Source: Mobula hypostoma (lineage: Eukaryota). From it: a stretch of 64,000 nt of DNA. A program made the translations under genes and the position numbers. Below the pieces are notes generated by a model. The model saw only the letters and a list, made by a program, of their open reading frames with translations. It made no database searches and was not told where the DNA came from. Shown one piece after another: positions 7,627-61,747 of the stretch; within the stretch, counting starts at the first letter, position 1; each line of letters opens with the position of its first letter. The stretch is taken from NCBI RefSeq assembly GCF_963921235.1, contig NC_086109.1, positions 12,896,001-12,960,000 on the forward strand. Reading direction: 5' to 3'.

Positions 7627-7666
7627 ATGATGTGGAGTTTGATTCTTCTAATTTGTGTCCTACATG
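7627..7666 (+). CDS. Leader (signal peptide) exon, unit 1 of Ig-superfamily receptor cluster
   Basis: ctctgtgaataaaATG context shared with 20035 and 40433; encodes MMWSLILLICVLH+G, then canonical phase-1 donor GTGAGT at 7667. Confidence 0.8.
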
Positions 7667-8323
7667 GTGAGTGGCAACCAGCATGGGATATTTTCATAAT
7701 TTGTTTTGACTAGGGGTCATTCATCATTTCCAGAACAATGCGTGAATATATGTAGACACGAAAGATTCCAGAATCTGGAGTTTAGAGAAAATTCCCGGAG
7801 GAACTCAGCAGACCAAGCAGCAGCCATCTGGGGGAAGGGGATTGTTGATGGTTTGGGTCAAGACCCTGCACTGAACCTGAGTGGAGCAGAATAGGAGAGA
7901 GGGCATTGTGAAATAGGATCAGTTATCTGGACTGCATCCCAGGGCTCTGAATGAAGTAGCTGGAGGGATTGTGGAAGCATTAGAAGTAATCTTTTAACTA
8001 TGGTTCCAGATGACTGAAAATTTAAAATGTAATTCATCTCTTTAAGAAGGGAGGGAGACAAAAGGCAGGATATTACAGGCCAACTAGCCTGGCTTCAATG
8101 GATGGTAAGATGTTAGAATCTGTTATTAAGGATGGGATTTCAGAGTACTCGAAGGCATGTGATAAAATACGCTGAAATCAACATGGTTTCTTTCAGGAGA
8201 AATCTACCCTCCCAAATCCATTGAAATTGTTTGAGCAAATAGCAGGCAGGATAGACAAAGGAGACTTTGTTTATCAGTGCCTTTGTTTGCTCTGCTAAGT
8301 CCCAAAATGGTCCACAGACTTCA

Positions 8324-8399
8324 TGCTATACTAGAGTTTCTCTCTGTTTGCTATACCAGAGTTTCTCTCCATTTGCTATACCAGAGTTTCTCTCCGTTT
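8324..8399 (+). repeat. 25-bp tandem repeat x3
   Basis: gctataccagagtttctctcc(a/g)ttt. Confidence 0.8.
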
Positions 8400-9748
8400 T
8401 CAAACTCTCATCATTCAGAATCCAGTTTGCTAAAAATTCTCAAGGGAGCAGGAAATACTGGAAGAGGAGTCTGTCCAATGAGATTTTGGGCTTGGCTTTT
8501 CAGGCTCTAGTAGATTGGAGGGGGATTGGAGTGACTGTCTTCACTCCTGAGGTACCATCAGACAGCAGTGTGGTCAGATGGATGGTTGACGGTACTGTGA
8601 AGACTAAGGGATTCCACTGATCCTCACACCCAAATGTCATCTGAAAAACTCAAGGCCAGTGTTGTTTAAATGAAAAGTGTAGCCATTACAGCTGGGACTC
8701 TTAATGAAACATCAGTGAGTGATCTTTGTGTGCATTTGAGTAGTTGGAAGGCATCTGATTTGAAAGCAGCATCTCCATTACTGCTAGACTTCAACATTCA
8801 AAGGAAATTTATTATCAAAGTGCTGCCTTGATATTCATTTTCAGGTAGGCATTCACAGTAGAACAAAGAAATACAATAGAATCAATGAAAAAATTGCACC
8901 CAAACAAAAGACTAACAATCAACCAATGTGCAAAGAAGACAGTGCAAATAAAAATCTAAATATTGTTGATGTTATTTTTATGCTGATAATGTGTTGTAGA
9001 AGCCTTGAAAGTGAGATTGAGTCCATGGGTTGTGGAATCAGTTCAGAGTTGAGGTGAGTGAAGTTATCTACCTCGGTTCAGGAGTCTGATGATTGTAGGG
9101 TATTAACTATTCCTGAACCTGGGGCAGTGGGACCTAAGGTGACTGCAGCTCTTATCCAATGGTAGTAGTGGGAAAAGAGCGTGGACGGTGGGGGTCCTTG
9201 AAGATGGCCGTTGCTTTTTTGTGGCAGCTCTCCTTGTAAATGTGTTTGTCCAGTGGTGGGGTGGCCTTTCCCTGTCATGGACTGGGTTGTTTCCAACACT
9301 TATGGAACATAGAAGATAGAACATTACAGCAGAGTACAGGGTCTTTTACCCTCCTTGAAGATCAGACTAATCCTTCCCTTCTGTAACTTTCCTATCCTCT
9401 ATGTGCCCACCTGAGAGATTATTTAAATGTATCTGCACATTCCATCACTCCTGGCAAGGCTTTCCATGCACCCAGCACAATGTGAAGATCCTGCCTCTGA
9501 CGCCCCCTCAATACTATCCTCCAGTCACCTTGAAGTTATTCCCCACACTTTAGCCATTTCTGCCCTGAGATATACTTTGGATAGACACTTGATCTATGCC
9601 TCTGATCATTTTGTACATCTCGATCATGTTGTCTCTCACCCTCTTGTGCTCCATTTCTGAATTGTCTTCAGATCCTCAAGAATTTTGCTCTCACTTTCAT
9701 CTTCCTTTTAGTTAGAGAGAGATGGAGATGTGGAGATGGAGAGATGGG

Positions 9749-9886
9749 GTAAGAGGAGTTGTAGGAAGAGCAATCACAATTGATTGCCCCTATGCGACAG
9801 TAAATCAGTCACACACAATGCACTGGTGCTGTGGAATATTGGTCACCAATATTCAGTCTTGGTGGAAATAAATGGGCTACATGGAG
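9749..9886 (+). pseudogene. Degenerate V-A exon remnant (unit 1)
   Basis: Reads VRGVVGRAITIDCPYATVNQSHTMHWCCG, then a 2-nt frameshift, then GHQYSVLVEINGLHG; clearly homologous to 21004 and 41914; 5' part replaced by GAGATG-rich sequence and 3' half missing. Confidence 0.8.
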
Positions 9887-12109
9887 AGGAAGGAAATATT
9901 GCATGTATAGTCAGTTTTGTTAAAAAGATTGGCTTTTTATTTGTCACGTGTACATGAAAACATCGAAGCATACAGCAAAATCCATCTTCTTGTGCCAAAT
10001 GAAATTAGTGAAGACTGTGCTGGGATTAGGCTGGGTTAAATTGGTGGGTTACTGGGTGGTGTGGCTCATTGGGCCTAAAGAGCCTGTTCTGTGCTGAATC
10101 TCCAAACAAATAAACACTGAGAACACGAGCTGTGGAGTCCTTGAAAGTGAGCCCTTAGGTTGTGTGTAGTGATCAGTTCAGTGTTGAGTGAGTGAAGTTA
10201 TCCATGCTGATTCAGGTGCCTGATCTTGAAACTACAGTCTGTCAGTTACTGAAACTTGATGCATTAAACTGTGAATCCTTTAAAACATATTTATCAAAGA
10301 AAATTACATCCTCTTGATCAATGGTGAAAGATAGACAACTAAAATAAACTCAGAATAGGGGTGTAGATGGCAGTTTTATTCTATGTTGTAACTTGCTGTG
10401 TAATAGTGACCTGCCACAGTTTTCCATGTATATGTGGCCTTTGCTCTCATTCTTCTCTCCCTCAGCCACTGTGTGAAGAAATTTATGCTATACCACATCA
10501 TTATCTGATTACAAAGAATCTTTCAACATTTCGCACTTTGTCATCATACAATGGTGATTCTTACATTTGCGAACAGCTCCCTTCAAGTAGCAGCTCCAAG
10601 GCTAATTGTACATCCACGGGTTACAGTTACATGTCAACTCTGAGAAAAACAGCAACTTCTATTTGCAGATACACACCCCACTGACCATTGCAAGCTGTAA
10701 CCACTCATTTTATTCAACGCCCAACTTTTAATCCATTCTTCATTTGTTTTTAAGAGCTTTGAATATTGACTGGAAATATATCCAATTTCAATTAATTTTA
10801 TTTTTATGTTGATCAAATTATTGCATCATTCTCAGGAAAGAAACTTATATATATTATTAAAGTGCATACTGTATATGTCACCATATACTATCCTGACATT
10901 CATTTACTTACAGGCATTCAGTGTAAATACAAAGAAATACAATAGAATCAATGAAAAACCACACACGAACAAAGACAACCAACCAAAAAAAGTGCAAATA
11001 CTAAAAGAAAAACAAAATAATAATAATAATAATAATAGTAATACATAAATGAGTACAAAATAATATTTGAGAACATGAGTTGTAGAATCTTTGATAGTGA
11101 GTACAGAGGTTGCGGAATCAGATTAGTAATAGGTGAAATTATTCACTCTGCTTCAAGAGCCCTATGGTTAGGGGATAATATCTGTTCCTGAACCTGCTGG
11201 TGTGGGACATGAGGCTCCTGTACTTGCTTCTGACAGCAACAGGAAGAAGAGAGCATGGCTTAATTGGTGACGGATGCTGTTTTTAGTGTAACAATGTGTT
11301 CCACAGTGAGGAGGGGTTTATCTGTGATTGACTGGGCTTTACCCAGTACCTTTGTAGGTTTTTCCATTTAAGGGCATTAGTGTTTTCATACCATGCCATG
11401 ATGCAACCTGTAAGAATACTCTCCACTGTGGATATATCGAACTTTGTCAAAGTTTTAGATGACAGTTTGATCTTCGCAAACTTTTAAGTAAATAATGCAC
11501 TGCCGTGCTTTCTTTGTCATGGCAGATACACGAGGGACCCAGGACAGATCCTCTAAAATGTTAATATCAAGGAATATAAGGTTACTGACTCTTTCCATCT
11601 CTGATCTCCTGATGAGGACTGGCTCATGGACCTTCAGATAACTCCTCTTGTAATCAATAATCAGCACTTTGGTTTTGCTGATGTTGAGTGGGAGGTAGTT
11701 GTTCTGACACCATTCAGCAGATTTTCAATCTTCCTGCTACATGCTGATTGAACACACATGAGTGCTGGAGGAACTCAACAGATCAGGCAGCATCTATGGA
11801 AAGAGATAAGCAGTGGATGTTTCTGGCCGAGACCCTTCATTGAACCCAGTTTCAGGTCAGGGACCCCTCCTCAGATCTGGATTAATGTTGAAGACTATCA
11901 GCGTAGAAAGAAGATCTGGTCAGAAGAATGATGTGTAAGATAAAAGGCGATACAGTCCAGGTTAAGTACTCCTGATTTATGGACACTTCTACATATGAAT
12001 AAGCCTCTGTAATGTACCTTAATTCAAAAGTCCAACATATATACATATCTTTACAGATGACACGAAGATTGTCGGTGTTCTGGATGGTACAGAAGGCTGT
12101 CGTAATTTA

Positions 12110-13075
12110 GTCATAGTCATAGACATACTTTATTGATCCCAAGAGAAATTGGGTTTCGTTACAGTTGCACCAACCAAGAATAGAGTATAAATATAGCAAT
12201 ATAAAACCATAAATAATTAAATAATATATAAATTGTGCCAGATGATAATAAATCCAGGACCAGCTTATTGGCTCAGGGTGTCTGACCCTCCAAGGGAGGA
12301 GCTGTGAAATGTGATGGCCACAGGCAGGAATAACTTCCTATGACACTCAGTGTTGCATCTCGGTGGAATGAGTCTCTGGCTGAATGTATTCCTGTGCCCA
12401 ACGCACATTATTTAGTGGATGGGAGACATTGTCCAAGATGGCATGCAACTTGGACAGCATCCTCTTTTCAGACACCACTGAGAGAGAGTCCAGTTCCATC
12501 CCCACAACATCACTGGCCTTACGAATGAGTTTGTTGATTCTGTTGGTGGCTGTCACCCTCAGCCTGCTGCCCCAGCATACAACAGCAAACATGATCGCAC
12601 TGGCCACCACAGACTAGTAGAACATCCTCAGCATCGTCCGACAGATGTTAAAAAACCTCAGTCTCCTCAGGAAATAGAGATGGCTCTGACCCTTCTTGTA
12701 ATCAGCCTCAGTGTTCTTTGACCAGTCCAGTTTATTGTCAATTCGTATCCCCAGGTATTTGTAATCCTCCACCATGTCCACACTGACTCCCTGGATGGAA
12801 ACAGGGGTCACCAGTGCCTTAGCTCTCCTCAGGTCCACCACCACCTCCTTAGTCTTTTTCACATTAAGCTGCAGATAATTCTGCTCACACCATGTGACAA
12901 AGTTTCTTACCGTAGCGCTATACTGAGCCTCATCTCCCTTGCTGATGCATTCAACTATGGCAGAGTCATCAGAAAACTTCTGAAGATGACAAGACTCTGT
13001 GCAGTAGTTGAAGTCCGAGGTGTAAATGGTGAAGAGAAAGGGAGACAAGACAGTCCCCTGTGGAGCCCCAGTGCT
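12110..13075 (-). mobile_element. Rex1/Babar-type LINE, RT C-terminus and 3' tail
   Basis: LSPFLFTIYTSDF...QKFSDDSAIV...YKYLGIRIDNKLDW; (AGTCAT)n tail near 12110. Confidence 0.85.
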
Positions 13076-20034: not shown

Positions 20035-20074
20035 ATGCTGTGGATTTGGATTCTTCTGTTTGGTTTCCTATCCG
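20035..20074 (+). pseudogene. Leader exon, unit 2, with dead splice donor
   Basis: MLWIWILLFGFLS+G followed by GGGAGT where paralogs 7667 and 40473 have GTGAGT. Confidence 0.8.
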
Positions 20075-21003: not shown

Positions 21004-21324
21004 TTTCAAGTGAATTGTGGGCGGAGAAAAATGTAACAGGAGTTGTGGGAAGAGCGATCACAATCGATTGTCACTATGAAGCAAAGTACCACTCACACAC
21101 AAAGTATTGGTGCGATGGATGGACTCATCAATGTTCAGTTTTAGTGGAAACAAATGGGCAACACAGACGGAGTGGACGATTGTCAGTCACAGATAACCCA
21201 GAACAGAGAATATTTACTGTTACAATGAAGGATCTTCACTCTGGAGATACAGGATGGTACAGCTGTGGTATTGAATCAACAGGTCACGATCCGATGTTTA
21301 ATGTATATTTACAAGTATCTGATG
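21004..21324 (+). CDS. Ig V-set exon, CD300/pIgR-like subtype A (unit 2), open frame
   Basis: ccctcag acceptor, G|GTAGGT donor, 321 nt; B-strand Cys (TIDCHY), C-C' cysteine pair KYWCDGWTHQC, DTGWYSC motif. Confidence 0.9.
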
Positions 21325-21546
21325 GTAGGTTTCTCAGGGATTAACTTTGTGCCAAACATAAAGTAAGTGTCTCATGATCTTTGTTGTCACCCTGTCCATC
21401 CCTCACTATCTCTGCATTAATATCAGTGCCAAATGTTTCCCTCTATATGGCAGGTCACTGAACCCAGTCAAAATTTCATTCTCTCCTGAAAGCCTCCAAA
21501 CATGTGACAGATATCTCACAAGTTGCTGCCTTTCAACAATCACGGG

Positions 21547-22141: not shown

Positions 22142-22461
22142 AACCTGTGTCTGTTCCTGTACTTCGATATCTGTCAACAGCAAATATCTCTCATCTCGGG
22201 GGCTCAGTGTCAGTTTCCTGTGAGTCTCTCCAGGGATCCCTTCCCATTCAGTGCACATGGTATGAACAAACCTCATCTGGGCATCCAAAGATTTCAGATA
22301 CTAATAAACTGGCTCTACATTGACAATCCTTCAACCAGCAGCACCATCAATATTACTGCAGTGCCTCGAATCTGGATCAGCAAGATCCAGTGCAATGGTT
22401 AATGTGACAGTCTTCAACAATGGAGAGATCTGCAGTAATGTGACAGAAATCCATGGCACCA
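22142..22461 (+). pseudogene. Ig C2-type exon subtype a (unit 2), disrupted
   Basis: ttcccacag acceptor, A|GTAAG donor; EPVSVPVLRY...CESLQGSLPIQCTWY; Cys codon is TGA at 22321-22323; 1-nt deletion near 22375 (320 nt vs 321 in paralog 45266). Confidence 0.88.
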
Positions 22462-23927
22462 GTAAGTTCTAATTTCAAGGGAGGATACATTTAAATATTT
22501 CTTTACGTTATTCTGTTACTGCTGCTCTTATACTTCTAGTGAGGGTAAGGAATTTCTTTGCATTTGTAGAAGTTACACATTGAAACCACCATGGGGTAGA
22601 AATAAAGTATAGTGAACAATTAAGTCTGTTACTTCCTCCAGGAAGATGTGGAGCATCTCAAACATAGTTGGACTTGCACCTCCGGACAAATTCAAAGCAT
22701 TCCATTCATACTTCAGGCTTCTGTTTTGAAAAGGCTGGAATGTGTGTTGAGTCATGAGACAGCGACATTGTCATAAAAAGAAAAGGAAGGACATAAAGTA
22801 TTTCAAAAATTGGTGGGAATGACAGAAATTTGCAATGTCAGGGGGCAGGGGTGAGTGTGGTTGCTATTACTAAGGAGAAGGTGCTTGGGAAGCTGAGAGG
22901 TCTGAAGGTAGATAACTAACCAGGACCAGATGGACTACACCCAAGGTTCTGAAAGATGTAGCTAAAGAAATTGTCCAGGCACTCGTGGTGATCTTTCAAG
23001 ATTAGCTGGACTCTGGAATGTTCCAGAGGACTGAAAAATTTGAAATGTCACTCCACTCTTTAAGAAAGGAAATTATAGACTAGTTAGCATGATTCCAGTG
23101 GTTGAGAAGATGATGGAGTCCATTATTAAGAACAAGGTTTGGGATACTTGGAAGCATATGATAAAATAGGGTTTCCAATGGGGAAATCTTGCCTGACAAA
23201 TCAGCCTCACTATGCAAGGACGTCCCTTTATTTTATTAATTGATCGATAGAGTGTAGATCAGGCCCTTCAGGCCGTTCAAGCCACACCAGCCCAGCAACC
23301 CTCAACAAACGTGATTAACCCATATCCCAATCAGAGGCCAATCTACAAAGACCAATTAAACTATGCTGTATGTCGTTGGACTATGGGAGGAAACGGGACC
23401 TCCCAGGGAACCTCAATGCATTCCACATGTAGAACATACAGACTCCATACATTTGAAGAGAGATGAGGAGGAATTTATTTAGCCAGAGGGTAAATGTTTA
23501 GTAAATGCATCAAAGATTATGGGAAAAAATCAGAAGAATGGGATTGAGTGGTATACTAATACACGGAGACATTAGTGGGCAGTGAAAATGATGACCCTAA
23601 TGAAATAAAAATCATTTCTTGTGAAGAGCTGTGAGCACAAGATGAGGGATGATGCTGCTATATTCTCAGTCTATGTGGAATTTAATTATACCGGTTGACA
23701 GTGTGGCAAATTCCTTAGAACACAGCAACAGCTTTAAGTAAAACAACTTTTTTTATTATTGTTGCATTCTTGATGGTTTGTGCTTTTTCTGTGCTGCATC
23801 AAATCCAGAGTAACAATAATTTTGATCTCCCTTACATTTGTGTAGTGGAAATGACATTAAACAATCTTGAATCTGCTTGATGAAATTTGGCCTTACGTAT
23901 CCATTTTCTTAAGAGCTTCTCCCTCAG

Positions 23928-24248
23928 TTTCGGGTGCTTTATGGGCAGAAGATAAAGTAAGAGGAGTTGTGGGAAGAGCGGTCACAATCGATTGTCACTA
24001 TGCACTAATGTACCGTTCACACACAAAGTATTTGTGCCGCATGTGGGGTCGTCAATGCACATTGTTAGTGAATACAAATGGGACAAATGAGCAGTATGGA
24101 AGAATGACAATCAGAGATAACACATCCCAGGGAATATTTACTGTTACTATGGAGAATCTTGTCTCTAATGATACAGGACTTTACAGATGTGGGGTTACAA
24201 CATCTGGCAATCATCCAGTGTTTGATGTGCATCTACAAGTACCTGACG
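23928..24248 (+). CDS. Ig V-set exon, subtype B (unit 2), open frame
   Basis: ccctcag acceptor, G|GTAGGT donor, 321 nt; KYLCRMWGRQC, DTGLYRC. Confidence 0.9.
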
Positions 24249-24652
24249 GTAGGTTTCTCATTGATTTATATTATGTCTCCATTGAAATGTCTCATCCATG
24301 TTTTCTCCTGGAAGTGTCTGGGCAGCAGGAATATCCTGAAGCTCCTCAGCAGTGCTGAGGCCTGTTGTGAGTGCGAAGGGATCGGGATACTCTACTCATG
24401 TTTTCTGACCCACTGACTGGACACCGATTTCTAGGGGGAGGCTCGGCACATTCTCCTGCCTCTGAACTGTATGAAATGTCACCCTCTCAGAGGTTTGCAT
24501 TCAGACATAAACTAATAATCTAACAACAACAGATCAGTGAGATAAAAATGTCGCTCGTGGTCTAAATACCTTAATAAATATTAAAAGGAAATTAGTTGTC
24601 AGAGCTCAGCAGACTCCTCAGTCCTCTGGAAGTAGGCCAGCCCAGCCCCACC

Positions 24653-24779
24653 ACACCGCAGGGAGTATTTACTGTTACTATGAAGGATCTTCGCTCTGAA
24701 GATACAACATGGTATAGCTGTGCTATCGAAACAACAGGTCACGATCCGATGTTTAATGTACGTTTACAAGTATCTGATA
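24653..24779 (+). pseudogene. 3' half of a V-A exon plus following intron, duplicated from 21210-21590
   Basis: TPQGVFTVTMKDLRSEDTTWYSCAIETTGHDPMFNVRLQVSD then A|GTAGGT; downstream 24780-25045 closely matches 21325-21590. Confidence 0.85.
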
Positions 24780-26086
24780 GTAGGTTTCCCGGGGATTAAC
24801 TTCGTTCCTTCCATAAAGTTAATGTCTCATGATCTTTGTTGTCACCCTGTCCATCCCTCACTATCTCTGCATTAATATCAGTGCCAAATGTTTCCTTCTA
24901 TATGGTAGGTCACTGAACCCAGTCAAAATTTCATTCTCTCCTGAAAGCCACTAAACATGTGACAATATCTCACAAGTTGCTGCCTTTCAACGATCGGGGG
25001 CCACTTTATTAGACACCTCCTGTACATAATAAAGTGGCCACTGATCAGTTGCTCCATGTTTTTTTTTTCTCTCTGTCTCTCTGTGTCTGTCTCTCTCTCT
25101 GTGTTTCTTCCCCCAAATCATGCCACTCTGAGCCCCCACACTCAGCACCCGCTGACCACCCACACCCAGCAGCCGACCTCACCACCCGGCCCATTCCCGT
25201 ATGGAAAATACTGCAATGGGATTACAGAAGAAGTTTGAACATGAACCTTCCAGGCCAGAAACAGGCCCTTCAGCCCGCCATGTACCACTGACTGTGTTCC
25301 CCAGAATGAAAGGGTTAACATATGAGATACATTGGATGGCTCTGTGCCTTTACTCACTAGAATTTAGAAGAATGAGAGGGGATCTCATTGAAACCTATAA
25401 AATATTGAAGACTAGATAGAGAAGACGTAGAAAGCACGTTTCCAACCATGGAGGAGTCTAGACTGCGGGAGAGAGGCAATAGATGGACATTCGTTTTGAA
25501 CGGAGCTGAGGAGGAATTTCTTGAGCCAGACAGTAGTGATTCTTGGAATTCATTGCCACGGAAGGCAATGGAAGCCAAATGATTGGGTATACTTAAAGTG
25601 TAGTATGATAGGTTCTTGATTAGTGAGGGCATCAAAGGATTCAGGGAAAAGGCAGCAGAATGGGTTTGAGAAGGAAAATATTTATCAGCATTATTGAATG
25701 TCAGAGCAGACCCAATAGACCAAATGGCCTAATTCTACTCCTTTTAGTGGGTTAGTCTAAATGCGTCTCTAATATTGCTCTTGTATCTGTTCTGTCTGTG
25801 TGCCTGAAGATGGCACCTTAAAGCAATGCTTGCCTTGAATTTTCCAAACAGCACTGGAGACAGTCTCCTTGATGCTGAGAGAGATTGTAACTCTCATTTT
25901 CACACTGACACACCCTCAGTGTCATCACTGCTGTCCTGATCTGTAATTCTGCTGCGTTTTAGGATAATGGCAAATGTGGCAGTTCAGGCATCTGGGAGGA
26001 TGCAGAGCCACGACAGATGTGGAGTTCAGATCCCCACCTATGGCATCTTTATTGACTTTCTGATGTTCAATGATTCTTTCCCTAAG

Positions 26087-26407
26087 AACCGGTGTCTGAT
26101 TCTGTGCTTCAATTTCTCTTTTCTGCAAATGTCTCGTGTGGTGGGGGCTCCGTGTCAGTGTCCTGTGAGTCTGTCCAGGGATCCCTTCCCATTCAGTACA
26201 CGTGGTATGAAAACATCTCCTCTGTGGATTCAAAGATCCCAAACTCAACTAAACTGAATTTAAGTTGTCAATCCTTCAAACACCAGCACCATCAATATTA
26301 CTGCACAGCCTCAAATATTCATGGAGCAAAGACTAGTGAAATAGTGAATGTGTCCATATAAAACAGAGGAGACAACTGCAGTTTTGTGATTCGATTCACT
26401 GGCACTG
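26087..26407 (+). CDS. Ig C2-type exon subtype b (unit 2), in-frame TAA at end of the Ig fold
   Basis: EPVSDSVLQF...CESVQGSLPIQYTWY...YYCTASN...VNVSI then TAA at 26359-26361; homologous codons continue to G|GTAAG donor at 26408; acceptor is cctaag. Confidence 0.82.
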
Positions 26408-29082
26408 GTAAGTGGTGGAGGGTGTGAATCATTAGGGAGATTGATTGAGTATCATGTACCGTTTGCAAGATTCAAGATTGCTTAATGTCATTTCCAATAC
26501 ACAAGTGCCAGGAGAACAAAATAATTGTTACTCTGGATCTGATGCAGCACAAATAAAACAGTCTAAGATATAGATCACAGTCATAAATAAACACAATAAA
26601 TATAAATACAAAAGGCACTTTATATACATTTATTGCATGTTCATAAAGTGCCACTAGGCACAATTGTGCTTGTAACTCAGGTGGCTGATATGAAATGATA
26701 AAGTAGTGGTGGTGGGTTTTGTGGAGGGCTGAGTAGTGGTGTGGGAGTGTTAATCTATGTTCTTAAGGCTGCATTCAAGCATTTCTGGAATATTCTGTCT
26801 CTGCTGTGACAAGTCTTGCAGAGAATGTCATGCCATGTTCAGTAGCTGAGAAGTGAGACTTAAACCAGAGGGTATCCTATCTTGCTGAGTATGGTAGCTT
26901 TGTATCTAAGTGGCTGATGTTTCTGGTTGCTGACTGAGATTTTCTCATCTTTGAAAAACAGCAAATACCCAAACTCGCTTCTTGTAGATTTCTAAAGTTT
27001 CTAGTGGTTTGCTTCATGGAAAATAGAGGGAATTGAACAGGTTAAACCACGTAAGAACTCAGGAAGAATGGCTGCAGCAGACCAATCAAATGTTGAAAGT
27101 GGATGTGAAGAGAATGTTTCTGTTGGTGGGGTAGCCGAGGACTAGTGGGCACAAACTCAAAAGAGAGGGATGTCCACTTAGGACAGAGATGAGGAGCAAT
27201 TTCCTTACCAGAGGTTGGTGAGACAGGAATTTGTTGCCACAAGCGATGGTGGAAGCCATGTCACTGAGTGTCTTTAAGCCAGTAGTTGATTGGTTCTTAA
27301 TTAACCAGGGCATGAAAGGTAATGGAGAGAAGGCAGGAGAATGGGGTTGAGAAGACAATTCATCAGTTATGATAAAATGGTGGACCAGGCTTGATGGGCT
27401 GAAGGTCTAATTCTGCTTCTACGTCTTCTGATCCTTGTAGTCTTATGGACATAGACAGGATGCAGAATGGAGTTCTATCTGGAAAAGTGTGAAGGTATAC
27501 ATTTTGGAAGATGACATTTGAAGGCAGAGTACTGTATCAGCACATATACAGAAAAGGGAAATGGGACTAATACAATAGGTGGAACTAGCTCAGGCAGGTC
27601 AGTGTGAATGAGTCGAGCTGAAGGGCCTGATCCCATACTGTATAACTCTATGATGTTTACTGACATTTGTCTGCCCACTATTAGAACAGGAACACAAGAG
27701 ATTCTGCAGCTGATGGACAACAAGAGCAACATATCCAAAATGATGGAGGAACTCAGCATCTATGCAAAGGAATAAACAGTAAGCGTTTCAGGCCAAAATC
27801 CTTCATCAGAAAGGATTTTCGTCTGCAATGTCTACTGTTTATTCTTTCCGTAGATGTTGCCTGAGCTGCTGAATTCCTTCAGTATTTTGTATTATATCAG
27901 GAGTTGTCTTTTCATTGAGAACAGAAGCATTATCCTGTTGTATCAACAACTGTACTTGGTCCAGTATCTCCACATACACTCAGTGCAGAGATGAGTTCGT
28001 CCCTCTGGTGGATGTTGAGACCCCCAAGAACAGATCTCCCAGAGCTGGCAGGTGTCATTCGCCTGGCTGGAACTTTCACTTCTGCTTGCACAGGATTAAA
28101 TAGGGTTTGCAATCCCAGCGATCAAAGCCCCATAACTTCCCCAGGAACATCGGTGTTCAGATATATACAGGAAACAGAAATTACTCACCTCCATGTAACC
28201 AATCAGCCCTTTATTGAGGCATGAGTTTCCACACGTCAATCATGTACCCTTGCTTGACTGCACTTGGAAAACACGTGAGACTGAATTATCTTTCCTTGCC
28301 TCAATAGGATGTGAATATTCATGTGAAACACTTACAACAGTATCAACTGCAAGGTAAGTCACTTGATCCAGTTCTGCTTAAATGTACAATGTTCTCATTG
28401 CTGGTGATATGATTGGCCCTGTTCCTGTAAAAGAGGAGATTAAAGTGGAAATTACAAGTTTATTCATTTAAACTGAATGTCTGTGAGAATATTGTTTTCA
28501 TTTCCACATCCAGTAGTATAACTAATTCTCTACTACATGTTTTAAGACCAAGAATCCAAGGTAAATTAATCTCTCCAAATATTCTGCAATAACTTAGACA
28601 TGAAAATTGATATAGGTTTTTATTGGAAGTAGATTATTGGAACGGATAATGATAACCAAAGGGGATAACCTCACTCAATTTCACTTGTCCCATTATTGAA
28701 ATGTGCACGCAGCAAATTGACTCACTTTTAAGAACTCTTCATCTCATGTTCTCGATTTTTTTTCCTTATTTAATTAATATTATTATTTCTTCTTTTTCTA
28801 TTTGCACAGTTTGTTGTTTTCTGCACTCTAGTTGATCGCTCTAGTTGGCTGTTTTTTCATTGATTCTGTTGTGGTTATTATTCTTCAGATTTATTGAGTG
28901 TGCCCACAAGAAATTGAATCTCAGGGTTATATATGGTGACAGATAATGTATTTTGATAATAAATCCACATTGAACTTTAAGCTTCAGGGTTCAGATAATG
29001 CTGTTGTGTAACAGAATCATATGGTCCTAGAGTGGTACAACACAGACAAAGACCATGTGGATTTCCATTGCACATCCATCTA

Positions 29083-30768: not shown

Positions 30769-30859
30769 TTTCATGATAAGGAAAATGGGCCGTTGGCTAC
30801 TCATCGCTCTGCTGATGATCTGCATGATTTCAGTCACATGGCTCACAAGGGAAACTAAG
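30769..30859 (+). CDS. Candidate transmembrane exon (unit 2)
   Basis: ctcttcccctttgctcag acceptor, AAG|GTAGG donor; FMIRKMGRWLLIALLMICMISVTWLTRETK; conserved paralog at 61657; needs phase-2 entry, so its link to the ectodomain is unresolved. Confidence 0.6.
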
Positions 30860-31699
30860 GTAGGCTTCTGGACATCAGTGGAATTTGCTTTGAAACATAC
30901 TCATCATTTAAGGGAAGAAATTTACTTTTTCTTATCCAATGGTCAATACAAAGCTATTTGCAGATGAAATTGACAAGATGTTGGCACACTGTATGTTTGC
31001 AGAATGCTTGATGCGAATATATTGGAGTCCAAGCTCCAGATACAACTGTATAGCAGAGTTCCCAGTGTCGATGAGTCTGATGATTTGACCGTTGCCTTTT
31101 ACAGAGATGCAATGAATCAGCTCCCCACAGACTGGTCTATAAGGTAAAGTGAAGGCTTCTGGATCACACAGATAGTGCTGGAATTTTGTACCAGGATCAA
31201 ATATTCATACCTCTTCAGAAATTGTGCAAATATAACATTTGTGGAGAATTAATTTCTCTTGTCATTCAATTGTTAACTTCATGAAGGTGAAAAAATAATG
31301 CTAGTATTCTTCACTACAGTGACATTATACATGGCGAATAGATCACATTCAGGCTCCTGGATTTTCTTGATGGAGTTAAGACCATAAGATACTGTGTAAG
31401 CAAAGGATCAGGATTAAGCCATTCATTGCTTCAAGTTTGCTTTGCCGTTCTATCACAGCTGATTTATTATCCCACTCAACGTAATTCTGCAGTCTTGTCC
31501 TTGAAGACTTTGACGCCCTTACTAATCAAGAACCTATCCACTTCTGCTTTAAATATACCCAATGACTTGGTCTCCACAGCTATCTGTGGCAATGAATTCC
31601 ACAGATTCACCATCCTCTGGCCACAAAATTTCTCCTCAGTTCTGTTCTAAAGGGATGACCTCTATTCCAGGACTGTCCTTTGATCCTAGCTATTGGAGA

Positions 31700-40432: not shown

Positions 40433-40472
40433 ATGCTCTGGACTTGGATTCTTCTGACTGGTTTCCTACCTG
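40433..40472 (+). CDS. Leader exon, unit 3, intact
   Basis: MLWTWILLTGFLP+G|GTGAGT; splices in frame to VSGA at 41914. Confidence 0.87.
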
Positions 40473-41913: not shown

Positions 41914-42234
41914 TTTCAGGTGCATTGTTGGCAAAGAAATATGTAAGAGGAGTTGTGGGAAGAGCGATCACAATCGATTGTCACTATGAGGAAATGTACT
42001 GCTCATACCAAAAGCATTGGTGCCATGGATGGACTCACCAATGTTCAGTTTTAGTGGAAACAAATGGGCAACATGGACAGAGTGGACGAATATCAATCAC
42101 AGATAACCAAAAACAAAGAATATTTACTGTTACTGTGGATAATCTTCGCTCTGGAGATGCAGGATGGTACAGCTGTGGAATTACAAGAGAAGGTGCCGAT
42201 CTGATATTTAGTGTAGATCTACAAGTATCTGATG
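41914..42234 (+). CDS. Ig V-set exon subtype A (unit 3), open frame
   Basis: ccctcag / G|GTAGGT, 321 nt; KHWCHGWTHQC, DAGWYSC; extra Cys in MYCSY. Confidence 0.9.
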
Positions 42235-45265: not shown

Positions 45266-45586
45266 AACCTGTGTCTGTTCCTGTGCTTCGATATCTGTCA
45301 TCAGCAAAGGTCTCACGTATCGGGGGCTCATTGACAGTTTCCTGTGAGTCCTTCCAGGGATCCCTTCCCATTCAGTACACATGGTATGAAAAAACCTCAT
45401 CTCAGCATCCAAAGATTTCAGATACAAAAGAACTGGCTCTACATTGTCAATCCTTCAACCAGCAGCACCATCAATACTACTGTAGTGCCTCGAATCGGCT
45501 TGGAGCAAGATCCAGTGCAATGGTTCATGTGACAGTCTTCAACAACGGAGAGATCTGCAGCTACGTGACAGAAATCAATGGCACTA
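45266..45586 (+). CDS. Ig C2-type exon subtype a (unit 3), intact
   Basis: ttcccacag / A|GTAAG, 321 nt; CESFQGSLPIQYTWY...YYCSASN; no stops. Confidence 0.9.
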
Positions 45587-48550: not shown

Positions 48551-48871
48551 TTTCAGGTGCTTTATGGGCAGAAGATAATGTAAGAGGAGTTGTGGGAAGA
48601 GCGATCACAATTGATTGCCACTATGCACCAATGTACCGTTCACACACAAAGTATTTGTGCCGCATGTGGGGTCTCCTATGCGTATCATTAGTGAATACAA
48701 ATGGGAAAAATGAGCAGTATGGAAGAAAGACAATCAGAGATTACACATCCCAGGGAATATTTTCTGTTACTATGGAGAATCTTGTCTCTCAAGATACAGA
48801 AATTTACAGATGTGGAATTACAACATCTGGATATGATCCAGTGTTTGACATGTATCTACACGTATCTGACG
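48551..48871 (+). CDS. Ig V-set exon subtype B (unit 3), open frame
   Basis: ccctcag / G|GTAGGT, 321 nt; KYLCRMWGLLC, DTEIYRC. Confidence 0.9.
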
Positions 48872-50220: not shown

Positions 50221-51188
50221 AAGTCCAGGTGATGTCAAACTCCCCTAATGTATGAGGAGCGTTTGAAGTTTCTGGGCCTGTCCTTGCAGGAATTTAGAAG
50301 AATGAGGGTGGATTTCATGGAAAATTATCCAGCATTGAAATGCCTGGTGGTTGTGGAGAGGATATTTCCTATAGTGTGGACCTCTAGGACCAAAGGGCAC
50401 AGACTCAGAATTGATGGACATCTCTTTAAAGGAGAGATGAGGAGGAATTTATTTAGCCAGAGGCTGGTGAATCTGTGGAATTCAATTCCACAGGAAGCTG
50501 TGGAGGCTAAATCCTTGGGTATATTTAAGGGAGAGTTGATAGGTTCTTGATAAGTAAGGGCATCAATGGTTACAGAGAGAAGGCAGGAGAATATATGAAG
50601 AGGAACAATAAATCAGCCATGATTGAATGGTAGAGCAGCATGAATAGACTGAATGGCCTAATTCTGCTCCTATGTCTGATGGTCTTATGGTTTATCGTCT
50701 TCCTGGTTCTCAGGTCTCACATGATTCCTTGTTGGCTTCATGTCAATATCAATACCAATAGATTCCCTTCCTGCTGTAGGTCACTGAAACCAATCACTCT
50801 CTCCTTAAAGTCACCATTCATTTTGTATGTATCTGACAATTTCCTGCTTTCAACCTATGGAGAGTTTTCCGGAACATCCACCAATGCTGCCATTCCAGAG
50901 TCAAACTGTTAGGTCTCACTTTAGAGTGTTTCCCCGCTGCTGAGAGAGACTGAAGCCCTGATTTTCACACTGACACACTCTGTGTCATCACTGTTGTTCT
51001 GATCAGGAGTCCTGCTGTTTTCGGTGATACTGACAGACATGGACGTTCTGGCAGCTCTGAGGATGACGAGACACAGTGGAGTAGATGAGCTGCTGAGATT
51101 CCAAACTGGTGTCTCCCGGTTGAGATACAGAACTGCTGAAATGTTTAGTGTGTTTGATTTTCAGATGTTCACTGATTATTTTCCACAG

Positions 51189-51506
51189 AACCCGTGTCTG
51201 TTCCTTTGCTTCGATTTTCACCACCAAGTGGCTCAAGTTGTGGGGACTCCGTGTCAGTGTCCTGTGAGTCTGTCCATGGATCCCTTCCCATTCAGCACTC
51301 ATGGTATGAAAAGATGCCATCTGAGGATTCAAAGATCTCTGACACAAATAAACTGGATCTACATTGCCAATCCATAAAATACAGCAATCATATGTATTAT
51401 TGCAACGCCTCAAATGTTAATGGAACAAAGTCCAGTGGAATGGTCAGTGTGTCCATCTCCAACAGTGTCATCACCTGCAGAAATGTGATTGAAGTCAACA
51501 GTACGG
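51189..51506 (+). CDS. Ig C2-type exon subtype b (unit 3), intact
   Basis: ttccacag / G|GTAGGT, 318 nt; CESVHGSLPIQHSWY...YYCNASN. Confidence 0.88.
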
Positions 51507-54628: not shown

Positions 54629-57309
54629 CAGTAAATGTAATAGGTTGCACAGGAGCACAGCAATTACTGTAACAGTATTACAGCACCAGCGATCAGTGAT
54701 CAGGGTCCAATTCCCACCACTGTTTGCAAGTTGTTTGTACGTTCTCCCAGTGAGAGCCTCAACATCACATCCCTGCTCCTATACTCTATTCCTCTAGAAA
54801 TGAATGCCAACATTGTATTCGCCTTCTTCACTACTGACTCAACTCAGGTTAGGATGAGTAAATCCTGAGGAAGCCATTTTGGTGCGAGAAGCATGGAACA
54901 CTTGCAGGCTGCCCCCAGCACAAACTCTGTTGGTCACTGTTGTAAACAATGCATTTCACTGTATGATCTGATGTACATGAGACAAATAAATCTCATCTTT
55001 AATCTTTAAGTGTTCATCGGGTAATAGATCACCTTTGGTCCATCGTGCTCAAGTACCTATTGGTCTAACAATTGTGATCTCTTGTTCTTGCAAGTACAAT
55101 GCAGATGAAATTTTATTTTATTTTCTTTTAACTGGGCCAATTGATTTCTGTGAAAAGACTGTGACAGAATTGATGACAACTGCACAAAGGGAAGAAACTA
55201 CTTCAGCTCAAATGTAAAGTATAAGGTTTTCTCTGCAGGTGGTTTCACTGCTACTGCTTCCAAGTAGAATCAGTTGGGAGAGAAATTTGTTTCTCTTTAA
55301 CTAGTGTTTATCATATTTGACATGATTAACTTCAACAAACTCATATCTTGGAAACTGAGCATTCCTGATTTTGTTGAACATGCGTCAAGCCTGAGATCAA
55401 AGATAAATTTCTTTTCCCAAATTATTTAATAATTTAAGCATAGCAATTGAAGCTCATGTACAGAATCGTAATGTCTTTGTTATATATTAGATCAACAGGC
55501 CCTTCAGCCTGACTCGTTCAAGCCAACCAGGATGTCCATCTAAGTTGAGCACATTTAATTTTATTTATTCCATATGCTTCTCTGCCAGGGGCTCCCAACC
55601 TGGGGTCAAGTCCAGTCCAGTCCAGTCAAGTGAAGTTTATTATCATTTAACTACATACATGTATACTGTCCAGTGAGGCAATGTTTCTCCAAACCAAGGT
55701 GTAAAGCACTGCAGTATACATAATGCTTAATAACCTATGAAAGTGAGAATGAAATTTACAGATTAATTACACGTTAATAAACTGAAGTGCCTGAATTATG
55801 TTTTGAAAGGTCCAGGGCATAAAAAAGTTTGTGAAGCCCTGTTCTAAGCCTTTCCTATTCACATATCTGTCAAGATGTCTTTTAACCTTTGTAACTGTAT
55901 CCACTTCTATGGATTGCTGTGGCAGCTTGTTCCATATACCCAAGATCCTCTGTATATAAAGTTGCTCCTTAGGTCCTTTCCCTACTCAATTTTAGCCTGC
56001 ACCTGCTCACTTTACTGTCCCCTCCCCTTGTAAAATGACAGTGATCATTCACCTTATCAATGCCCCTCATGATTTTATATACCTCTGTTAAATGACCCAT
56101 CAGTATTCTAAGCTCCAGGGCAAAAGTCTCAGCCTATCCAACCCTCCATTATAACTCTAGCACTCCATTCTCAGGATTTTCCTCATGGTTTTTCTGCGGC
56201 ACCCTTTCGAGTCTAATGATATCTCACTAACGTCTTATACAGCCATAACATCATAAAATAATCTTGTACAGTACTCACCACCCTGGACAACAAAGTAAAT
56301 GTACCAAATGCCTTTTTCAGTACCCTGTTTACCCATGACACCACTTTCAGGTAACAAGGTACCTGGAAGCCTCGATCTCTTTTCTGAACATTCTCCTACC
56401 ATTTTACTGTGTATGTCTTGCCCTGGTTTACCTTATTAAAATCCAATACCTCCAATTTGAAAAACCCCACTACAACCTGCTAACTCCTTCCACCAAGCCG
56501 CTGTTATATTTAATTTGGTACCTGAATCTGAATCCTGAATCCCATGTTGATCTAAACCTCTGGAGTAGTGTACATCTGGGTCCTTGTCAAAGGCCTTACT
56601 AAGGTTCATGTGGACAACATCCATTGCCCTACTCTCATTAATCCTTTCTGTCTGTAATGAGCTCGTTGTGCCTATGTGGGGAGCCGGAGACCATTGAGCT
56701 TCGAAGTTTTTAGAGCACCTGAATTATTTAATTGTAGTTTGACAAGAGTCATTAATCCTTTAGAGATCCTTGGGTGTTTATTGAATGACTCACTCTTTGT
56801 AATATGGACCCTGGTGCTTTCTGTTTAAACTTGTTAAGCTTATTTTAATAGGCTCAGGAATTCCATGTTACTTGTATTACTTAAGCGGATGCCTGATTAG
56901 CGCTAATCATAGGGTCCAATTTGAGAGCATTTGGTCTTGCATTCACTGCAGGCTTTCTGCTGGGTCTGTTGGAGATGTTCCACAGTCCAGAGGAGAAAAG
57001 ATTTTGACATGACACCAGTGAGAACTCAACAATCAATGTCCAAACCAGTGTGGGATATGGAGGGAGTTGACTTTTGTAGGAGAGCTAGTTTTAAGCAGAT
57101 GCAGTGTTTCCTTTCTTAGATCCTTTACTGTGAGTGCAGAAGGATCTGTAGATCCTCAGCTTCTCCCCACATCCTGATTGTTATACACATGTGTTCATAC
57201 ATACATAATTATACTTTATGGATATTTGTAATAATTTATATTTTTAATCGATTTTAATACTCTTCACTGACATGGTAAAGCAGCCAATCAACTTGAAGAC
57301 CCAACTATC

Positions 57310-59990: not shown

Positions 59991-61055
59991 CCACTGACGT
60001 ACTCTCTTCCTCTCCCCTCCTATTGGGAAGAAATTACAAAAGTCTGAAAGCATGTACCACAAGCTTCAAGGACAGCTTCTTTCTCACTGTTACAAAACTA
60101 TTGCATGCTCTCATAGTATGATAAAATGGGTGTTTGATCTTATAATCTAACTGGGCTTGCACCTTATTGTCTACTGCATGGCACTTTCTCTGTAACCGTA
60201 ACACTTTATTCTGCATTCTCTTACTGTTTCCCCTTGTACTACCTTAATGCAATGTTATAATCTGTCACTTACTCCATTCAAATGTGGAGCATTTCAAACA
60301 TAGTTGAACTTGCACATCCAAGTTTCAAACTGTCCGAGCCTGTCCATAGCCCAAACCCTCCAGTCCCAGCAGCATCTTTGTGAATGCTCTCTGTACCTTC
60401 TCTAATTTAATCAAATTCTTCCTATGGAACTACACAGAGTAGTCAAGTTGAGATCTTGTCAATGTCCTTTATAGCTCTAACATGCCATTGCAACCGTACT
60501 TAATGCCCCATTCAATGAAGGCAAGCTGGTCATATTCCTTGTTCAGCACTTTGTCCGCCTGTGTTGCCACTTTCAGGTACCTGTGTAGTTGCATACCTAG
60601 TTCTCTACTGTGTAAGTTTTGCCCTTGTTCAATTTCCCAAAATTCATCATTTCACATTGCCTGAGTTCAATTCCATCAGTCATTCCATTAGCCGCTTTCC
60701 AAGTTCAAAATTCAGGGTAAACTTATTATCAAAGTATGTATACCATAAACAACCTGGAGATTCATCATCTTTCACACATGCACGAAAGAAAGAAACACAA
60801 TAGAATCCATGACAACCCACACACAACGAAGTCCGACAAATGTCCAATGTGCAAAAGAGGCTTTAAATAAAACATCTTTTATTAATATTGTTGCTTTCTT
60901 TATCATTTTTTTGTTTTTGTGCTGCTTCAGATCCAGAGGAACAATGATTTTGTTCTCCTTTACATTTGTATACAAGAAATGACATTAAACAATCTTGAAT
61001 CTACTTGTGTAAATTTGATTTTACCTGTAAATTTTCTGAAGAATTTCTCCCTCAG

Positions 61056-61243
61056 TTTTGGGTGCTTTATGGGCAGAAGATAAAATAAGAGGAGTGATCA
61101 CAATCGATTGTCACTATGCACCAATATACAGTTCACACACAAAGTATTTGTGCCACATGTGGGATCGCCAGAGCACATTGTTAGTGAATACAAATGGGCA
61201 AAGTGAACAATATGGAAGAATAATAATCAGAGATGACACATGA
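61056..61243 (+). pseudogene. 5' half of a third V exon (subtype B) in unit 3
   Basis: Intact ccctcag acceptor; 12-nt deletion (VGRA missing), C' Cys changed to Ser, TGA after RDDT where the sequence joins a LINE fragment. Confidence 0.85.
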
Positions 61244-61656
61244 GAGGAGAAGTTGGTATTCTGCTAAAAAAAGGGATGTAATTGAACTAGATGTAATGCA
61301 GAAAAGATTTCAAAGCTCAAAATAAATTTATTATACAAGCCTGAGATTCATCTTCTCGCGGGCATACACAGTAATTCCAACAATCATAATAGTATCAATG
61401 AATGACTGTAATGCAAGATGTTGCCACTGCCTCGAGAAAATCTGGTTTTGTTCCAAATGATAATCAGGTTTTTCTCCTTTCTCCAACTCATCGTTCAGTC
61501 AACACTAGTTTACTCTTCTAATTGAACTCATCTGCCTCTGCTTATCTACCGAGCTCCACTCCACTAAGGTTACAGAGGAAACAGGAGGTAAATGTTTCAA
61601 ACACAGAGCCATCTCGTTTTGTCTCATCAGTTCTGTATCTCTTCCCCTTTGCTCAG

Positions 61657-61747
61657 CTTCATGATATGGAAGGTTGGTCGTTGGCTGCTCTTCACTCTGC
61701 TGCTGATCTGCACTATTTCAGTCTCATGGTTCACAAGGGAAATTAAG
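61657..61747 (+). CDS. Candidate transmembrane exon (unit 3)
   Basis: FMIWKVGRWLLFTLLLICTISVSWFTREIK; same acceptor, donor and 91-nt length as 30769. Confidence 0.6.

What the first reader, a model, noticed from the sequence alone, without database searches (positions are those of the whole stretch)
7627..61747. Tandem cluster of modular V-C2-V-C2 immune receptors joining CD300/pIgR-type and FcR-like domains
Seen: three paralogous leaders, six V exons or fragments of two subtypes plus one V remnant, four C2 exons of two subtypes, and two TM candidates. All Ig exons are phase 1/1 and ordered L-VA-C2a-VB-C2b-(V)-TM in units 2 and 3; shared intronic MITEs and microsatellites show a roughly 20-kb unit duplication. 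Established: the C-C' cysteine pair marks CD300/pIgR/TREM V domains, GSLPIxYxWY resembles FcR-like/PECAM C2 domains, and skate MDIRs mix such domains. Inference: a lineage-specific, birth-and-death innate receptor family with an alternating four-domain ectodomain; I cannot tell whether this exact architecture has been described.
Basis: partly seen in the sequence, partly recalled or inferred. Interest (0 to 1): 0.8.

Follow-up and report, generated by a model that had tools for sequence, protein, structure and literature searches.

The report
Ray MDIR immune-receptor gene cluster

Summary
The + strand carries three paralogous leader exons, six V exons or fragments plus one V remnant, four C2 exons and two TM exons. 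All intact Ig exons are phase 1/1. The V exons match pIgR D1 and CD300; the C2 exons match FCRL5 best.

This is the modular domain immune-type receptor (MDIR) family of the clearnose skate. Unit 3 splices conceptually into a 512-aa open frame, L-VA-C2a-VB-C2b-stalk-TM-short tail. It is colinear end to end with skate MDIR5 (57% identity, same WKVGRWLLF membrane motif) and 79% identical to a Mobula birostris RefSeq protein. RefSeq predicts V-C2, V-C2-V-C2 and longer forms in sharks, rays and a chimaera, under the names 'pIgR-like' or 'FCRL5'.

Unit 2 is dead: its leader donor is GG, C2a has a TGA and a 1-nt deletion, and C2b has a TAA. Unit 1 is a leader plus a V scrap. Both full units have a small stalk exon and a tail exon. 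Unit 3 is a chimera of an inhibitory-type C2b and stalk joined to an activating-type TM. Its stalk exon has TG where the acceptor AG should be, so even unit 3 may not work.

Verdict: new members of a known family, of modest interest. Earlier notes of this scan flag neighbouring loci that look like the same family.

The parts
7627..7666 (+). Unit 1 leader exon (MMWSLILLICVLH, phase-1 GT donor); intact
9725..9903 (+). Unit 1 V-exon fragment, truncated at both ends, with a frameshift and a stop; a relic
20035..20074 (+). Unit 2 leader exon; the splice donor is GG instead of GT (20075-20076)
21004..21324 (+). VA2, V-set exon of pIgR/CD300 type, open, phase 1/1
22142..22462 (+). C2a2 exon, broken: TGA replaces the second Cys codon at 22321-22323, and a 1-nt deletion near 22375 shifts the frame
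23928..24248 (+). VB2, V-set exon, open, phase 1/1
24650..24796 (+). V 3' remnant: a 91.5% identical copy of the 3' half of VA2 plus its downstream intron (21204-21589 matches 24659-25043)
26087..26407 (+). C2b2 exon (activating-type C2b lineage), with an in-frame TAA at 26359-26361
28308..28353 (+).
30769..30859 (+). Unit 2 TM exon (FMIRKMGRWLLIALLMICMISVTWLTRETK)
31105..31152 (+). Unit 2 tail exon (RCNESAPHRLVYKVK, then stop)
40433..40472 (+). Unit 3 leader exon (MLWTWILLTGFLP), GT donor
41914..42234 (+). VA3, V-set exon, open, phase 1/1
45266..45586 (+). C2a3 exon, open, phase 1/1; best solved-structure match is FCRL5
48551..48871 (+). VB3, V-set exon, open, phase 1/1
51189..51506 (+). C2b3 exon (inhibitory-type C2b lineage), open, phase 1/1
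55135..55213 (+). Unit 3 stalk exon (PIDFCEKTVTELMTTAQREETTSAQ), of inhibitory-gene type. The conserved acceptor reads TG, not AG. GTAAAG donor, ends in phase 2. A decayed TM-like relic follows it.
60375..61241 (+). Copy of the intron upstream of VB plus the 5' half of a VB exon (4-codon deletion, then a stop at the point where similarity to a V exon ends). It abuts the TM-upstream segment at 61241/61247, which reads as a deletion scar of a fourth unit.
61657..61747 (+). TM exon used by unit 3 (FMIWKVGRWLLFTLLLICTISVSWFTREIK), phase 2 to 0; 97% identical to M. birostris P0173
62003..62050 (+). Unit 3 tail exon (KPDESAPPRLVYKVN, then stop)

Best explanation
The stretch is a tandem cluster of genes of the modular domain immune-type receptor (MDIR) family of cartilaginous fishes. 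MDIRs are non-rearranging, germline-encoded type I membrane receptors. Their ectodomain is built from V-C2 modules: a pIgR/CD300-type V domain followed by an FCRL-like C2 domain.

Unit 3 (40.4-62.05 kb, 8 exons) is an MDIR5-type gene: leader, VA, C2a, VB, C2b, stalk, then a TM with Lys/Arg at its outer edge (WKVGRW) and a 15-residue tail with no tyrosine motif.

By analogy with paired receptor families, it would act as the adaptor-coupled (activating) partner of ITIM-bearing MDIRs that carry near-identical ectodomains. This step is inferred, not shown.

Unit 3 arose as a chimera. The C2b and stalk of an inhibitory-type gene were joined by deletion to the TM and tail of a downstream activating-type unit.

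Unit 2 is a pseudogene of the classical activating type, and unit 1 is a leader plus a V scrap. The cluster is thus a snapshot of birth-and-death evolution by unequal crossing-over.
For: - **Family identity.** Homologues found with the C2a3 exon are elasmobranch RefSeq proteins. A search with one of them, P0006 (V-C2-V-C2-TM-3 ITIM), returns MDIR3, MDIR5 and MDIR2 of Rostroraja eglanteria at 46-59% identity.
- **Unit 3 gene model.** The conceptual CDS is open for 512 aa. It aligns globally with MDIR5 at 57% with every domain in register, including WKVGRWLLF and KKxDES. It is 79% identical to M. birostris XP_072134926.
- **Architecture across the family.** Alternating V-C forms dominate the 125 family proteins classified, with either ITIM tails or the K[VM]GRW TM.
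- **Domain types.**
- **Splice sites and phases.**
- **Chimera.** C2b2 and C2b3 fall in two different well-supported clades (99 and 97-98 SH-aLRT). C2b3 groups with ITIM-type genes. C2b2 versus C2b3 gives dS 0.43, against 0.12-0.14 for the other exon pairs. The unit 3 stalk matches ITIM-type stalks. M. birostris P0173 has the same stalk-to-TM join.
- **Pseudogene lesions in unit 2.**
Against: - No transcript data were available, so no splice junction is shown.
- The unit 3 stalk exon has TG at the conserved acceptor. Skipping that exon puts a stop 8 nt into the TM exon, so unit 3 may be non-functional.
- No fetched RefSeq protein is more than 92% identical to any window exon. These units may therefore not be annotated as coding.
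- The activating role of the WKVGRW membrane segment is inferred. As I recall the abstract of the 2006 paper, which I could not open, it lists MDIR5 among the forms without a recognised signalling motif.
- A 2014 survey reported finding no FcR gamma chain in cartilaginous fishes (PMC4016189).
Confidence: 0.9

Rival explanations
1. The whole cluster is dead. Unit 3 is also a pseudogene or an unproductive transcript, so nothing in this window makes a working membrane receptor.
For: - The conserved acceptor of the unit 3 stalk exon is TG.
- The donor position used in M. birostris (after TTAQ) has no GT in the window.
- Skipping the stalk exon shifts the frame (my reading).
- Units 1 and 2 are clearly broken.
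- No fetched annotated protein matches the window exons above 92%.
Against: - All five 5' exons of unit 3, and its TM and tail exons, are open with canonical sites.
- A GTAAAG donor 26 nt downstream keeps phase 2 and matches the TM acceptor.
- An in-frame AG lies 30 nt upstream of the lost acceptor.
- One base could be a polymorphism or an assembly error.
Confidence: 0.4
2. This is a previously undescribed receptor family that independently joined CD300/pIgR-type V and FcR-like C2 domains. This is the novel option the first reader left open.
For: RefSeq names the homologues only 'pIgR-like', 'FCRL5' or 'uncharacterized'. Very few held papers mention MDIRs.
Against: Named MDIR2, MDIR3 and MDIR5 proteins lie within the same hit list at 46-59% identity over 62-98% of the query. 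MDIR5 has the same domain order and the same TM motif.
Confidence: 0.03
3. The V exons are germline segments of a rearranging Ig or TCR locus.
For: Weak matches to TCR alpha and delta V domains (E 1e-5 to 1e-3).
Against: - Each V exon encodes the whole domain through the G strand. It ends in a phase-1 GT donor, and nothing like a recombination signal was seen where one would lie.
- pIgR and CD300 matches are stronger by 10 to 40 orders of magnitude.
- The V exons are interleaved with C2 exons in a single reading frame.
Confidence: 0.01

Closest known systems
Skate MDIR5 (modular domain immune-type receptor 5, Rostroraja/Raja eglanteria, ABC86800.1; Cannon et al. 2006, Immunogenetics 58:362, cited in PMC3031540)
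   Same: It has the same order, L-V-C2-V-C2-stalk-TM-short tail. It shares the WKVGRWLLF membrane motif and the KKxDES tail start. Global identity to unit 3 is 57%.
   Different: It comes from a different batoid order. The unit 3 stalk is of the inhibitory-gene type and 10 residues longer. Unit 3 has a non-canonical acceptor at the stalk exon, and its expression is unknown.
Mobula birostris 'polymeric immunoglobulin receptor-like isoform X1' XP_072134926.1 (P0173) and its ITIM-bearing near-twin XP_072134917.1 (P0163)
   Same: P0173 is 79% identical to unit 3. It has the same chimeric join of an inhibitory-type stalk (RIDFCENTVTELMTTAQ) to the WKVGRW TM, and its TM exon is 97% identical. P0163 has an almost identical ectodomain on an ITIM tail, which is the paired-receptor pattern.
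   Different: It is a paralogue, not an orthologue: its Ig exons are only 70-90% identical to those of the window. These are machine predictions, and I could not fetch their genomic DNA.
Mammalian CD300/CMRF35 and pIgR
   Same: The V domain carries the extra C-C' cysteine pair. The alignment to pIgR D1 is strong. CD300 also exists as paired activating and inhibitory forms (established knowledge).
   Different: CD300 has a single V domain. pIgR has only V-type domains in series. Neither has interleaved C2 domains.
FCRL family (FCRL5)
   Same: It is the best solved-structure match of the C2 exons, including the GSLPIxYxWY strand.
   Different: In the solved FCRL5 chain the C2 exon matched repeated domains, and FCRL ectodomains have no pIgR-type V domain (my knowledge). 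Similarity per domain is modest, 15-25 bits.

Membership tests
MDIR (modular domain immune-type receptors, cartilaginous fish) | Full-length sequence homology to the named skate MDIR proteins | tested here: met
   The unit 3 conceptual protein is 57% identical to MDIR5 and 55% to MDIR3 in global alignment. MDIR2, MDIR3 and MDIR5 sit inside the family hit list.
MDIR (modular domain immune-type receptors, cartilaginous fish) | Ectodomain built as modules from a few Ig-domain subfamilies, in variable number | tested here: met
   The window has VA, VB, C2a and C2b types. Family proteins range from V-C to V-C x4 or more. VB, C2a and the C2b subtypes form supported clades. The 'four subfamilies, one to six domains' wording is my recollection of the 2006 abstract, which I could not open.
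MDIR (modular domain immune-type receptors, cartilaginous fish) | Members differ in signalling end: ITIM tails, a charged TM, or neither | tested here: met
   The window holds only the WKVGRW TM with a short tail. ITIM forms occur in homologues. Earlier notes report them in neighbouring windows, which I did not check.
MDIR (modular domain immune-type receptors, cartilaginous fish) | Large clustered multigene family | tested here: met
   The window holds three units plus a scar of a fourth in 55 kb. Many RefSeq homologues in one species share a longest-contig length, for example 55,338,035 bases in Hemitrygon akajei, which points to one chromosome.
MDIR (modular domain immune-type receptors, cartilaginous fish) | Expression in immune tissues | not testable with these tools
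   No transcript data are reachable.
CD300 / pIgR | V domain with the additional C-C' disulphide and pIgR D1-like sequence | tested here: met
   the alignment places WC...C of the window opposite WC...C of pIgR D1. E is 4e-46 for pIgR and 2e-20 for CD300f.
CD300 / pIgR | Ectodomain made only of such V domains (one in CD300, several in pIgR) | tested here: not met
   C2 exons alternate with V exons in one frame.
FCRL | Ectodomain without a pIgR-type V domain (the feature as I know the family; not checked against the literature here) | tested here: not met
   V-set exons are present at positions 1 and 3.
Rearranging Ig/TCR V genes | A V segment that ends before the J-encoded strand and is followed by a recombination signal | tested here: not met
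   The V exons encode the whole domain and end in G|GTAGGT splice donors.

The most novel reading that the evidence does not exclude
Cartilaginous fishes are reported to lack pIgR, FcRL and classical FcR homologues (PMC4016189). MDIRs join in one chain the two domain types that those families use. They could be the functional Ig-binding or Ig-transport receptors of sharks and rays. Alternatively, they could preserve the mixed ancestral architecture from which V-only (pIgR/CD300) and C2-only (FCRL) families later separated.
Probability: 0.1. Interest if true: 0.65.

Novelty: new member of a known kind. Interest (0 to 1): 0.2.

Why it matters
The finding gives exon-level anatomy of an MDIR cluster: 318-321-nt phase-1 Ig exons, separate stalk, TM and tail exons, and the lesions of its pseudogenes. 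It also gives a concrete case of an activating-type receptor made by fusing an inhibitory-type gene body to a neighbour's TM exon.

It shows that the RefSeq labels 'pIgR-like' and 'FCRL5' in sharks and rays hide the MDIR family. That bears on published statements that cartilaginous fishes have nothing resembling pIgR or FcRL domains.

None of this overturns current views. The family, its domain affinities and the V-C2-V-C2 form were published in 2006.

Tried and rejected
- **The 2006 MDIR paper could not be opened.** I tried PMC3701310 and PubMed id 16738934, and also a 2010 review, PMC2823954. What I say about its abstract is from memory. The family name and accessions come from database names and from PMC3031540.
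- **Orthologous genomic DNA could not be fetched.** P0007 is not on record. The Hypanus sabinus P0199 locus exists, with a gene span of 21.9 kb, but its file is too large. Splice sites of the homologues were therefore not compared at DNA level.
- **A long TM exon was considered and rejected.** I first read the sequence just upstream of the TM exons (SHQFCISSPLLS) as a long form of the TM exon encoding the REYSCETFTT stalk. Its phase does not fit, and true stalk exons exist at 28308-28353 and 55135-55213.
- **No ITIM exons were found.** A low-stringency tblastn with the ITIM tails of six homologues found no ITIM exon anywhere in the window. Only the stalk and a decayed TM-like stretch of the inhibitory-type 3' end survive.
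- **The first Pfam call failed** on the stop in C2a2. I repeated it on the open exons.
- **The species was not verified.** Earlier notes call the genome the lesser devil ray. No fetched Mobula hypostoma protein matches a window exon above 92%.
- **Not run.** No structure prediction was made; it would not change the verdict.
Full report
**1. What is in the sequence**

The window is vertebrate DNA of about 42% GC, rich in retroelement ORFs. I took the four V-like and three C2-like ORFs and searched them back against the window. This gave eleven Ig exons or fragments, all on the + strand:
- V fragment 9725-9903
- VA2 21004-21324
- C2a2 22142-~22462
- VB2 23928-24248
- V 3' remnant 24650-24796
- C2b2 26087-26407
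- VA3 41914-42234
- C2a3 45266-45586
- VB3 48551-48871
- C2b3 51189-51506
- VB-type 5' fragment 60995-61240

Reading the boundaries shows one pattern for each exon type. V exons start at CCCTCAG|TT TCA GG and end at GAT G|GTAGGT. C2 exons start at CACAG|AA CC and end at ACT A|GTAAGT or the like. All are 318-321 nt and phase 1/1.

tblastn with homologues and direct reading add more exons:
- Three leader exons, at 7627-7666, 20035-20074 and 40433-40472.
- Two TM exons, at 30769-30859 and 61657-61747.
- Two tail exons, at 31105-31152 and 62003-62050.
- Two small stalk exons, at 28308-28353 and 55135-55213.

**2. Domain types**

Pfam calls the V exons V-set and the C2 exons Ig_3, Ig_2 or Ig_C17orf99.

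Among solved structures VA3 matches pIgR (E 4e-46 over all five domains) and CD300f/CLM-1 (E 2e-20). Its extra cysteine pair aligns to that of pIgR D1. NKp44 and TREM2 follow, and TCR V domains reach only 1e-5 or worse.

C2a3 matches FCRL5 first (E 1e-32, several domains at 15-25 bits each). Titin, CAR and CD22 follow far behind.

The V exons encode the whole domain and end in splice donors, so they are not rearranging segments.

**3. What family it is**

A full HMMER scan with C2a3 found 39 proteins at E<1e-30. Those above 50% identity carry one to six matching stretches. The ten top hits I looked up are RefSeq predictions from sharks and rays named 'polymeric immunoglobulin receptor-like', 'Fc receptor-like protein 5' or 'uncharacterized'. 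The eight I scanned with Pfam carry V-set and/or C2-type Ig domains, most of them both.

One of them, Hemitrygon akajei XP_072886821 (P0006, 597 aa), reads L-VA-C2a-VB-C2b-stalk-TM and has three ITIMs. Searching with it returned about 110 chondrichthyan proteins. They come from many sharks, from skates, stingrays, mantas and a sawfish, and from Callorhinchus.

Among the hits are three proteins named by their depositors as modular domain immune-type receptors of the clearnose skate (accessions confirmed):

| Protein | Accession | Identity to P0006 | Query covered |
|---|---|---|---|
| MDIR3 | ABC86797.1 | 56% | 98% |
| MDIR5 | ABC86800.1 | 59% | 80% |
| MDIR2 | ABC86796.1 | 46% | 62% |

Hits outside cartilaginous fishes cover at most about 58% of the query at 24-44% identity, and their Pfam lists show mainly V-set domains.

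MDIR5 reads L-V-C2-V-C2-stalk-WKVGRWLLF...-short tail. PMC3031540 describes MDIRs as multigene activating and inhibitory receptors related to CD300, TREM, FCAR and pIgR, and it cites Cannon et al. 2006. I could not open that paper.

I classified 125 family proteins with HMMs built from four V and four C2 domains. V-C, V-C-V-C and V-C-V-C-V-C are the common forms. They end either in ITIM tails or in the K[VM]GRW membrane segment.

**4. Gene models in the window**

*Unit 3.* Joining its eight exons gives a 1539-nt open frame of 512 aa. Every site is AG/GT except one. The product aligns globally with:
- MDIR5 at 57%, with every domain, the TM motif and the tail start in register
- M. birostris XP_072134926 (P0173) at 79%
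- ITIM-type P0163 at 73% and P0006 at 70%

The exception is the stalk exon. Where homologues need ..AG|GG, the window reads AACTG|GG (55133 is T). The donor position that P0173 implies (after TTAQ) has no GT. A GTAAAG donor 26 nt further on keeps phase 2, which fits the phase-2 acceptor of the TM exon. An in-frame AG lies 30 nt upstream, but the pyrimidine tract would then fall inside the exon. If the stalk exon is skipped, the frame hits TGA 8 nt into the TM exon. Unit 3 is therefore intact in coding capacity but doubtful in splicing.

*Unit 2.* This unit is dead. Its lesions are:
- The leader donor is GG.
- C2a2 has TGT>TGA at 22321 and a 1-nt deletion near 22375.
- C2b2 has TAA at 26359, where homologues have Tyr.

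Its stalk, TM and tail exons are still readable and match the Hemitrygon and Hypanus activating-type genes (..G REYSCETFTTVS..FMIWK..).

*Unit 1.* This is an intact leader followed by a truncated, frameshifted V fragment.

**5. How the cluster evolved**

Self-comparison gives colinear matches between unit 2 and unit 3 through exons and introns:

| Unit 2 | Unit 3 | Identity |
|---|---|---|
| 19811-20422 | 40209-40821 | 81% |
| 20421-21375 | 41285-42285 | 76% |
| 21373-22820 | 44460-45945 | 78% |
| 23558-24592 | 48187-49216 | 80.5% |
| 25852-26451 | 50917-51550 | 70.6% |
| 30342-31321 | 61247-62218 | 83% |

Exon pairs VA2/VA3, VB2/VB3 and C2a2/C2a3 have dS 0.12-0.14 and dN/dS 0.7-1.3. C2b2/C2b3 has dS 0.43.

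In the C2 tree, C2b2 groups with the C2b of Hemitrygon and Hypanus activating-type genes (99). C2b3 groups with the C2b of ITIM-type genes and of M. birostris P0173 (97-98). The C2a exons form one clade (94). In the V tree, VB2 and VB3 sit in a stingray-plus-sawfish VB clade (96-97). The VA exons are unresolved among batoid first domains. In sharks and Callorhinchus the two V domains of one protein are each other's nearest relatives, so the VA/VB split is a batoid feature.

The unit 3 stalk exon matches ITIM-type stalks and is followed by a decayed TM-like stretch. No ITIM exon survives anywhere in the window.

Immediately upstream of TM3 lies a copy of the pre-VB intron plus the 5' half of a VB exon (60375-61241). 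It abuts the segment homologous to the region upstream of TM2.

The simplest reading is that an inhibitory-type gene lost its own TM and ITIM exons and now reaches the TM and tail of a downstream, largely deleted activating unit. P0173 of M. birostris has the same stalk-to-TM join, with a TM exon 97% identical. The join is therefore older than this copy.

Unit 2 also carries a recent internal duplication: 21204-21589 matches 24659-25043 at 91.5%.

**6. How it most likely works**

*Shown.* The coding potential is for a signal peptide, four Ig domains, four N-glycosylation sequons, a hydrophobic segment preceded by K-V-G-R, and a 15-residue tail without tyrosine motifs.

*Inferred.* This is a type I surface receptor. 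The basic residue at the outer edge of its TM would recruit an acidic-TM ITAM adaptor, as in the FcR-gamma-coupled receptors of mammals (my knowledge of those families). It would be the activating partner of ITIM-bearing MDIRs with near-identical ectodomains, such as the P0173/P0163 pair in M. birostris. I put this at about 0.5 given that unit 3 is expressed.

Three caveats apply:
- As I recall the 2006 abstract, MDIR5 was listed as lacking a recognised motif.
- A 2014 survey found no FcR gamma chain in sharks.
- The ligand is unknown.

**7. Novelty and verdict**

The family (2006), its affinities to CMRF35/CD300, pIgR, TREM and FcR homologues, and the exact V-C2-V-C2 form (MDIR5) are already on record. 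RefSeq predicts dozens of members in related species. No fetched protein is encoded by this window, the best exon identity being 92%.

The window adds new members, mostly pseudogenes, and a clear example of receptor remodelling by deletion and fusion.

Earlier notes of this scan flag neighbouring loci that look like the same family: an ITIM and charged-TM pair and a chimera 9-11 kb beyond the window's end, and this same stretch read again. They call the genome a devil ray. I did not test those notes, apart from confirming that units 1 and 2 are both broken.

Noticed in passing
window 5812-6805 and 18783-19621: A block of about 1 kb holds two satellite arrays, with 37-38-bp and 62-68-bp units. 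It lies 0.4-0.8 kb upstream of leader 1 and of leader 2, but in opposite orientation relative to the leaders (77-88% identity on the minus strand). Nothing similar lies upstream of leader 3.
   Followed up: partly
window 53601-54236 (+): A 211-aa ORF carries a Cys-rich stretch followed by a GIY-YIG-like motif (..GVIYCVWCSRCGLLYIGET..), as in the endonuclease of Penelope-like retroelements. It lies in the long intron between C2b3 and the stalk exon.
   Followed up: no
window 12347-13048, 38040-40091, 43496-44230, 57492-59175 and 62419-63896: LINE-type reverse-transcriptase ORF fragments on both strands fill the introns and spacers.
   Followed up: partly
window 61590-61656 and 30700-30768: The sequence just upstream of both TM exons reads, in the TM frame, SHQFCISSPLLS. 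This weakly recalls the REYSCETFTTVS stalk, which is encoded elsewhere. It may be an old duplicated stalk absorbed into the intron, or chance.
   Followed up: partly
literature (PMC4016189): A 2014 survey states that no pIgR, FcRL or FcR-gamma homologues exist in sharks. Yet RefSeq now labels dozens of shark and ray MDIR-family proteins 'pIgR-like' or 'FCRL5' on domain similarity. Neither the paper nor the labels mention MDIRs.
   Followed up: partly
Hypanus sabinus locus of P0199: The V-C2-V-C2 gene of the Atlantic stingray with the WKVGRW TM spans 21.9 kb, almost the same as unit 3 here (21.6 kb). Its DNA could not be fetched.
   Followed up: no
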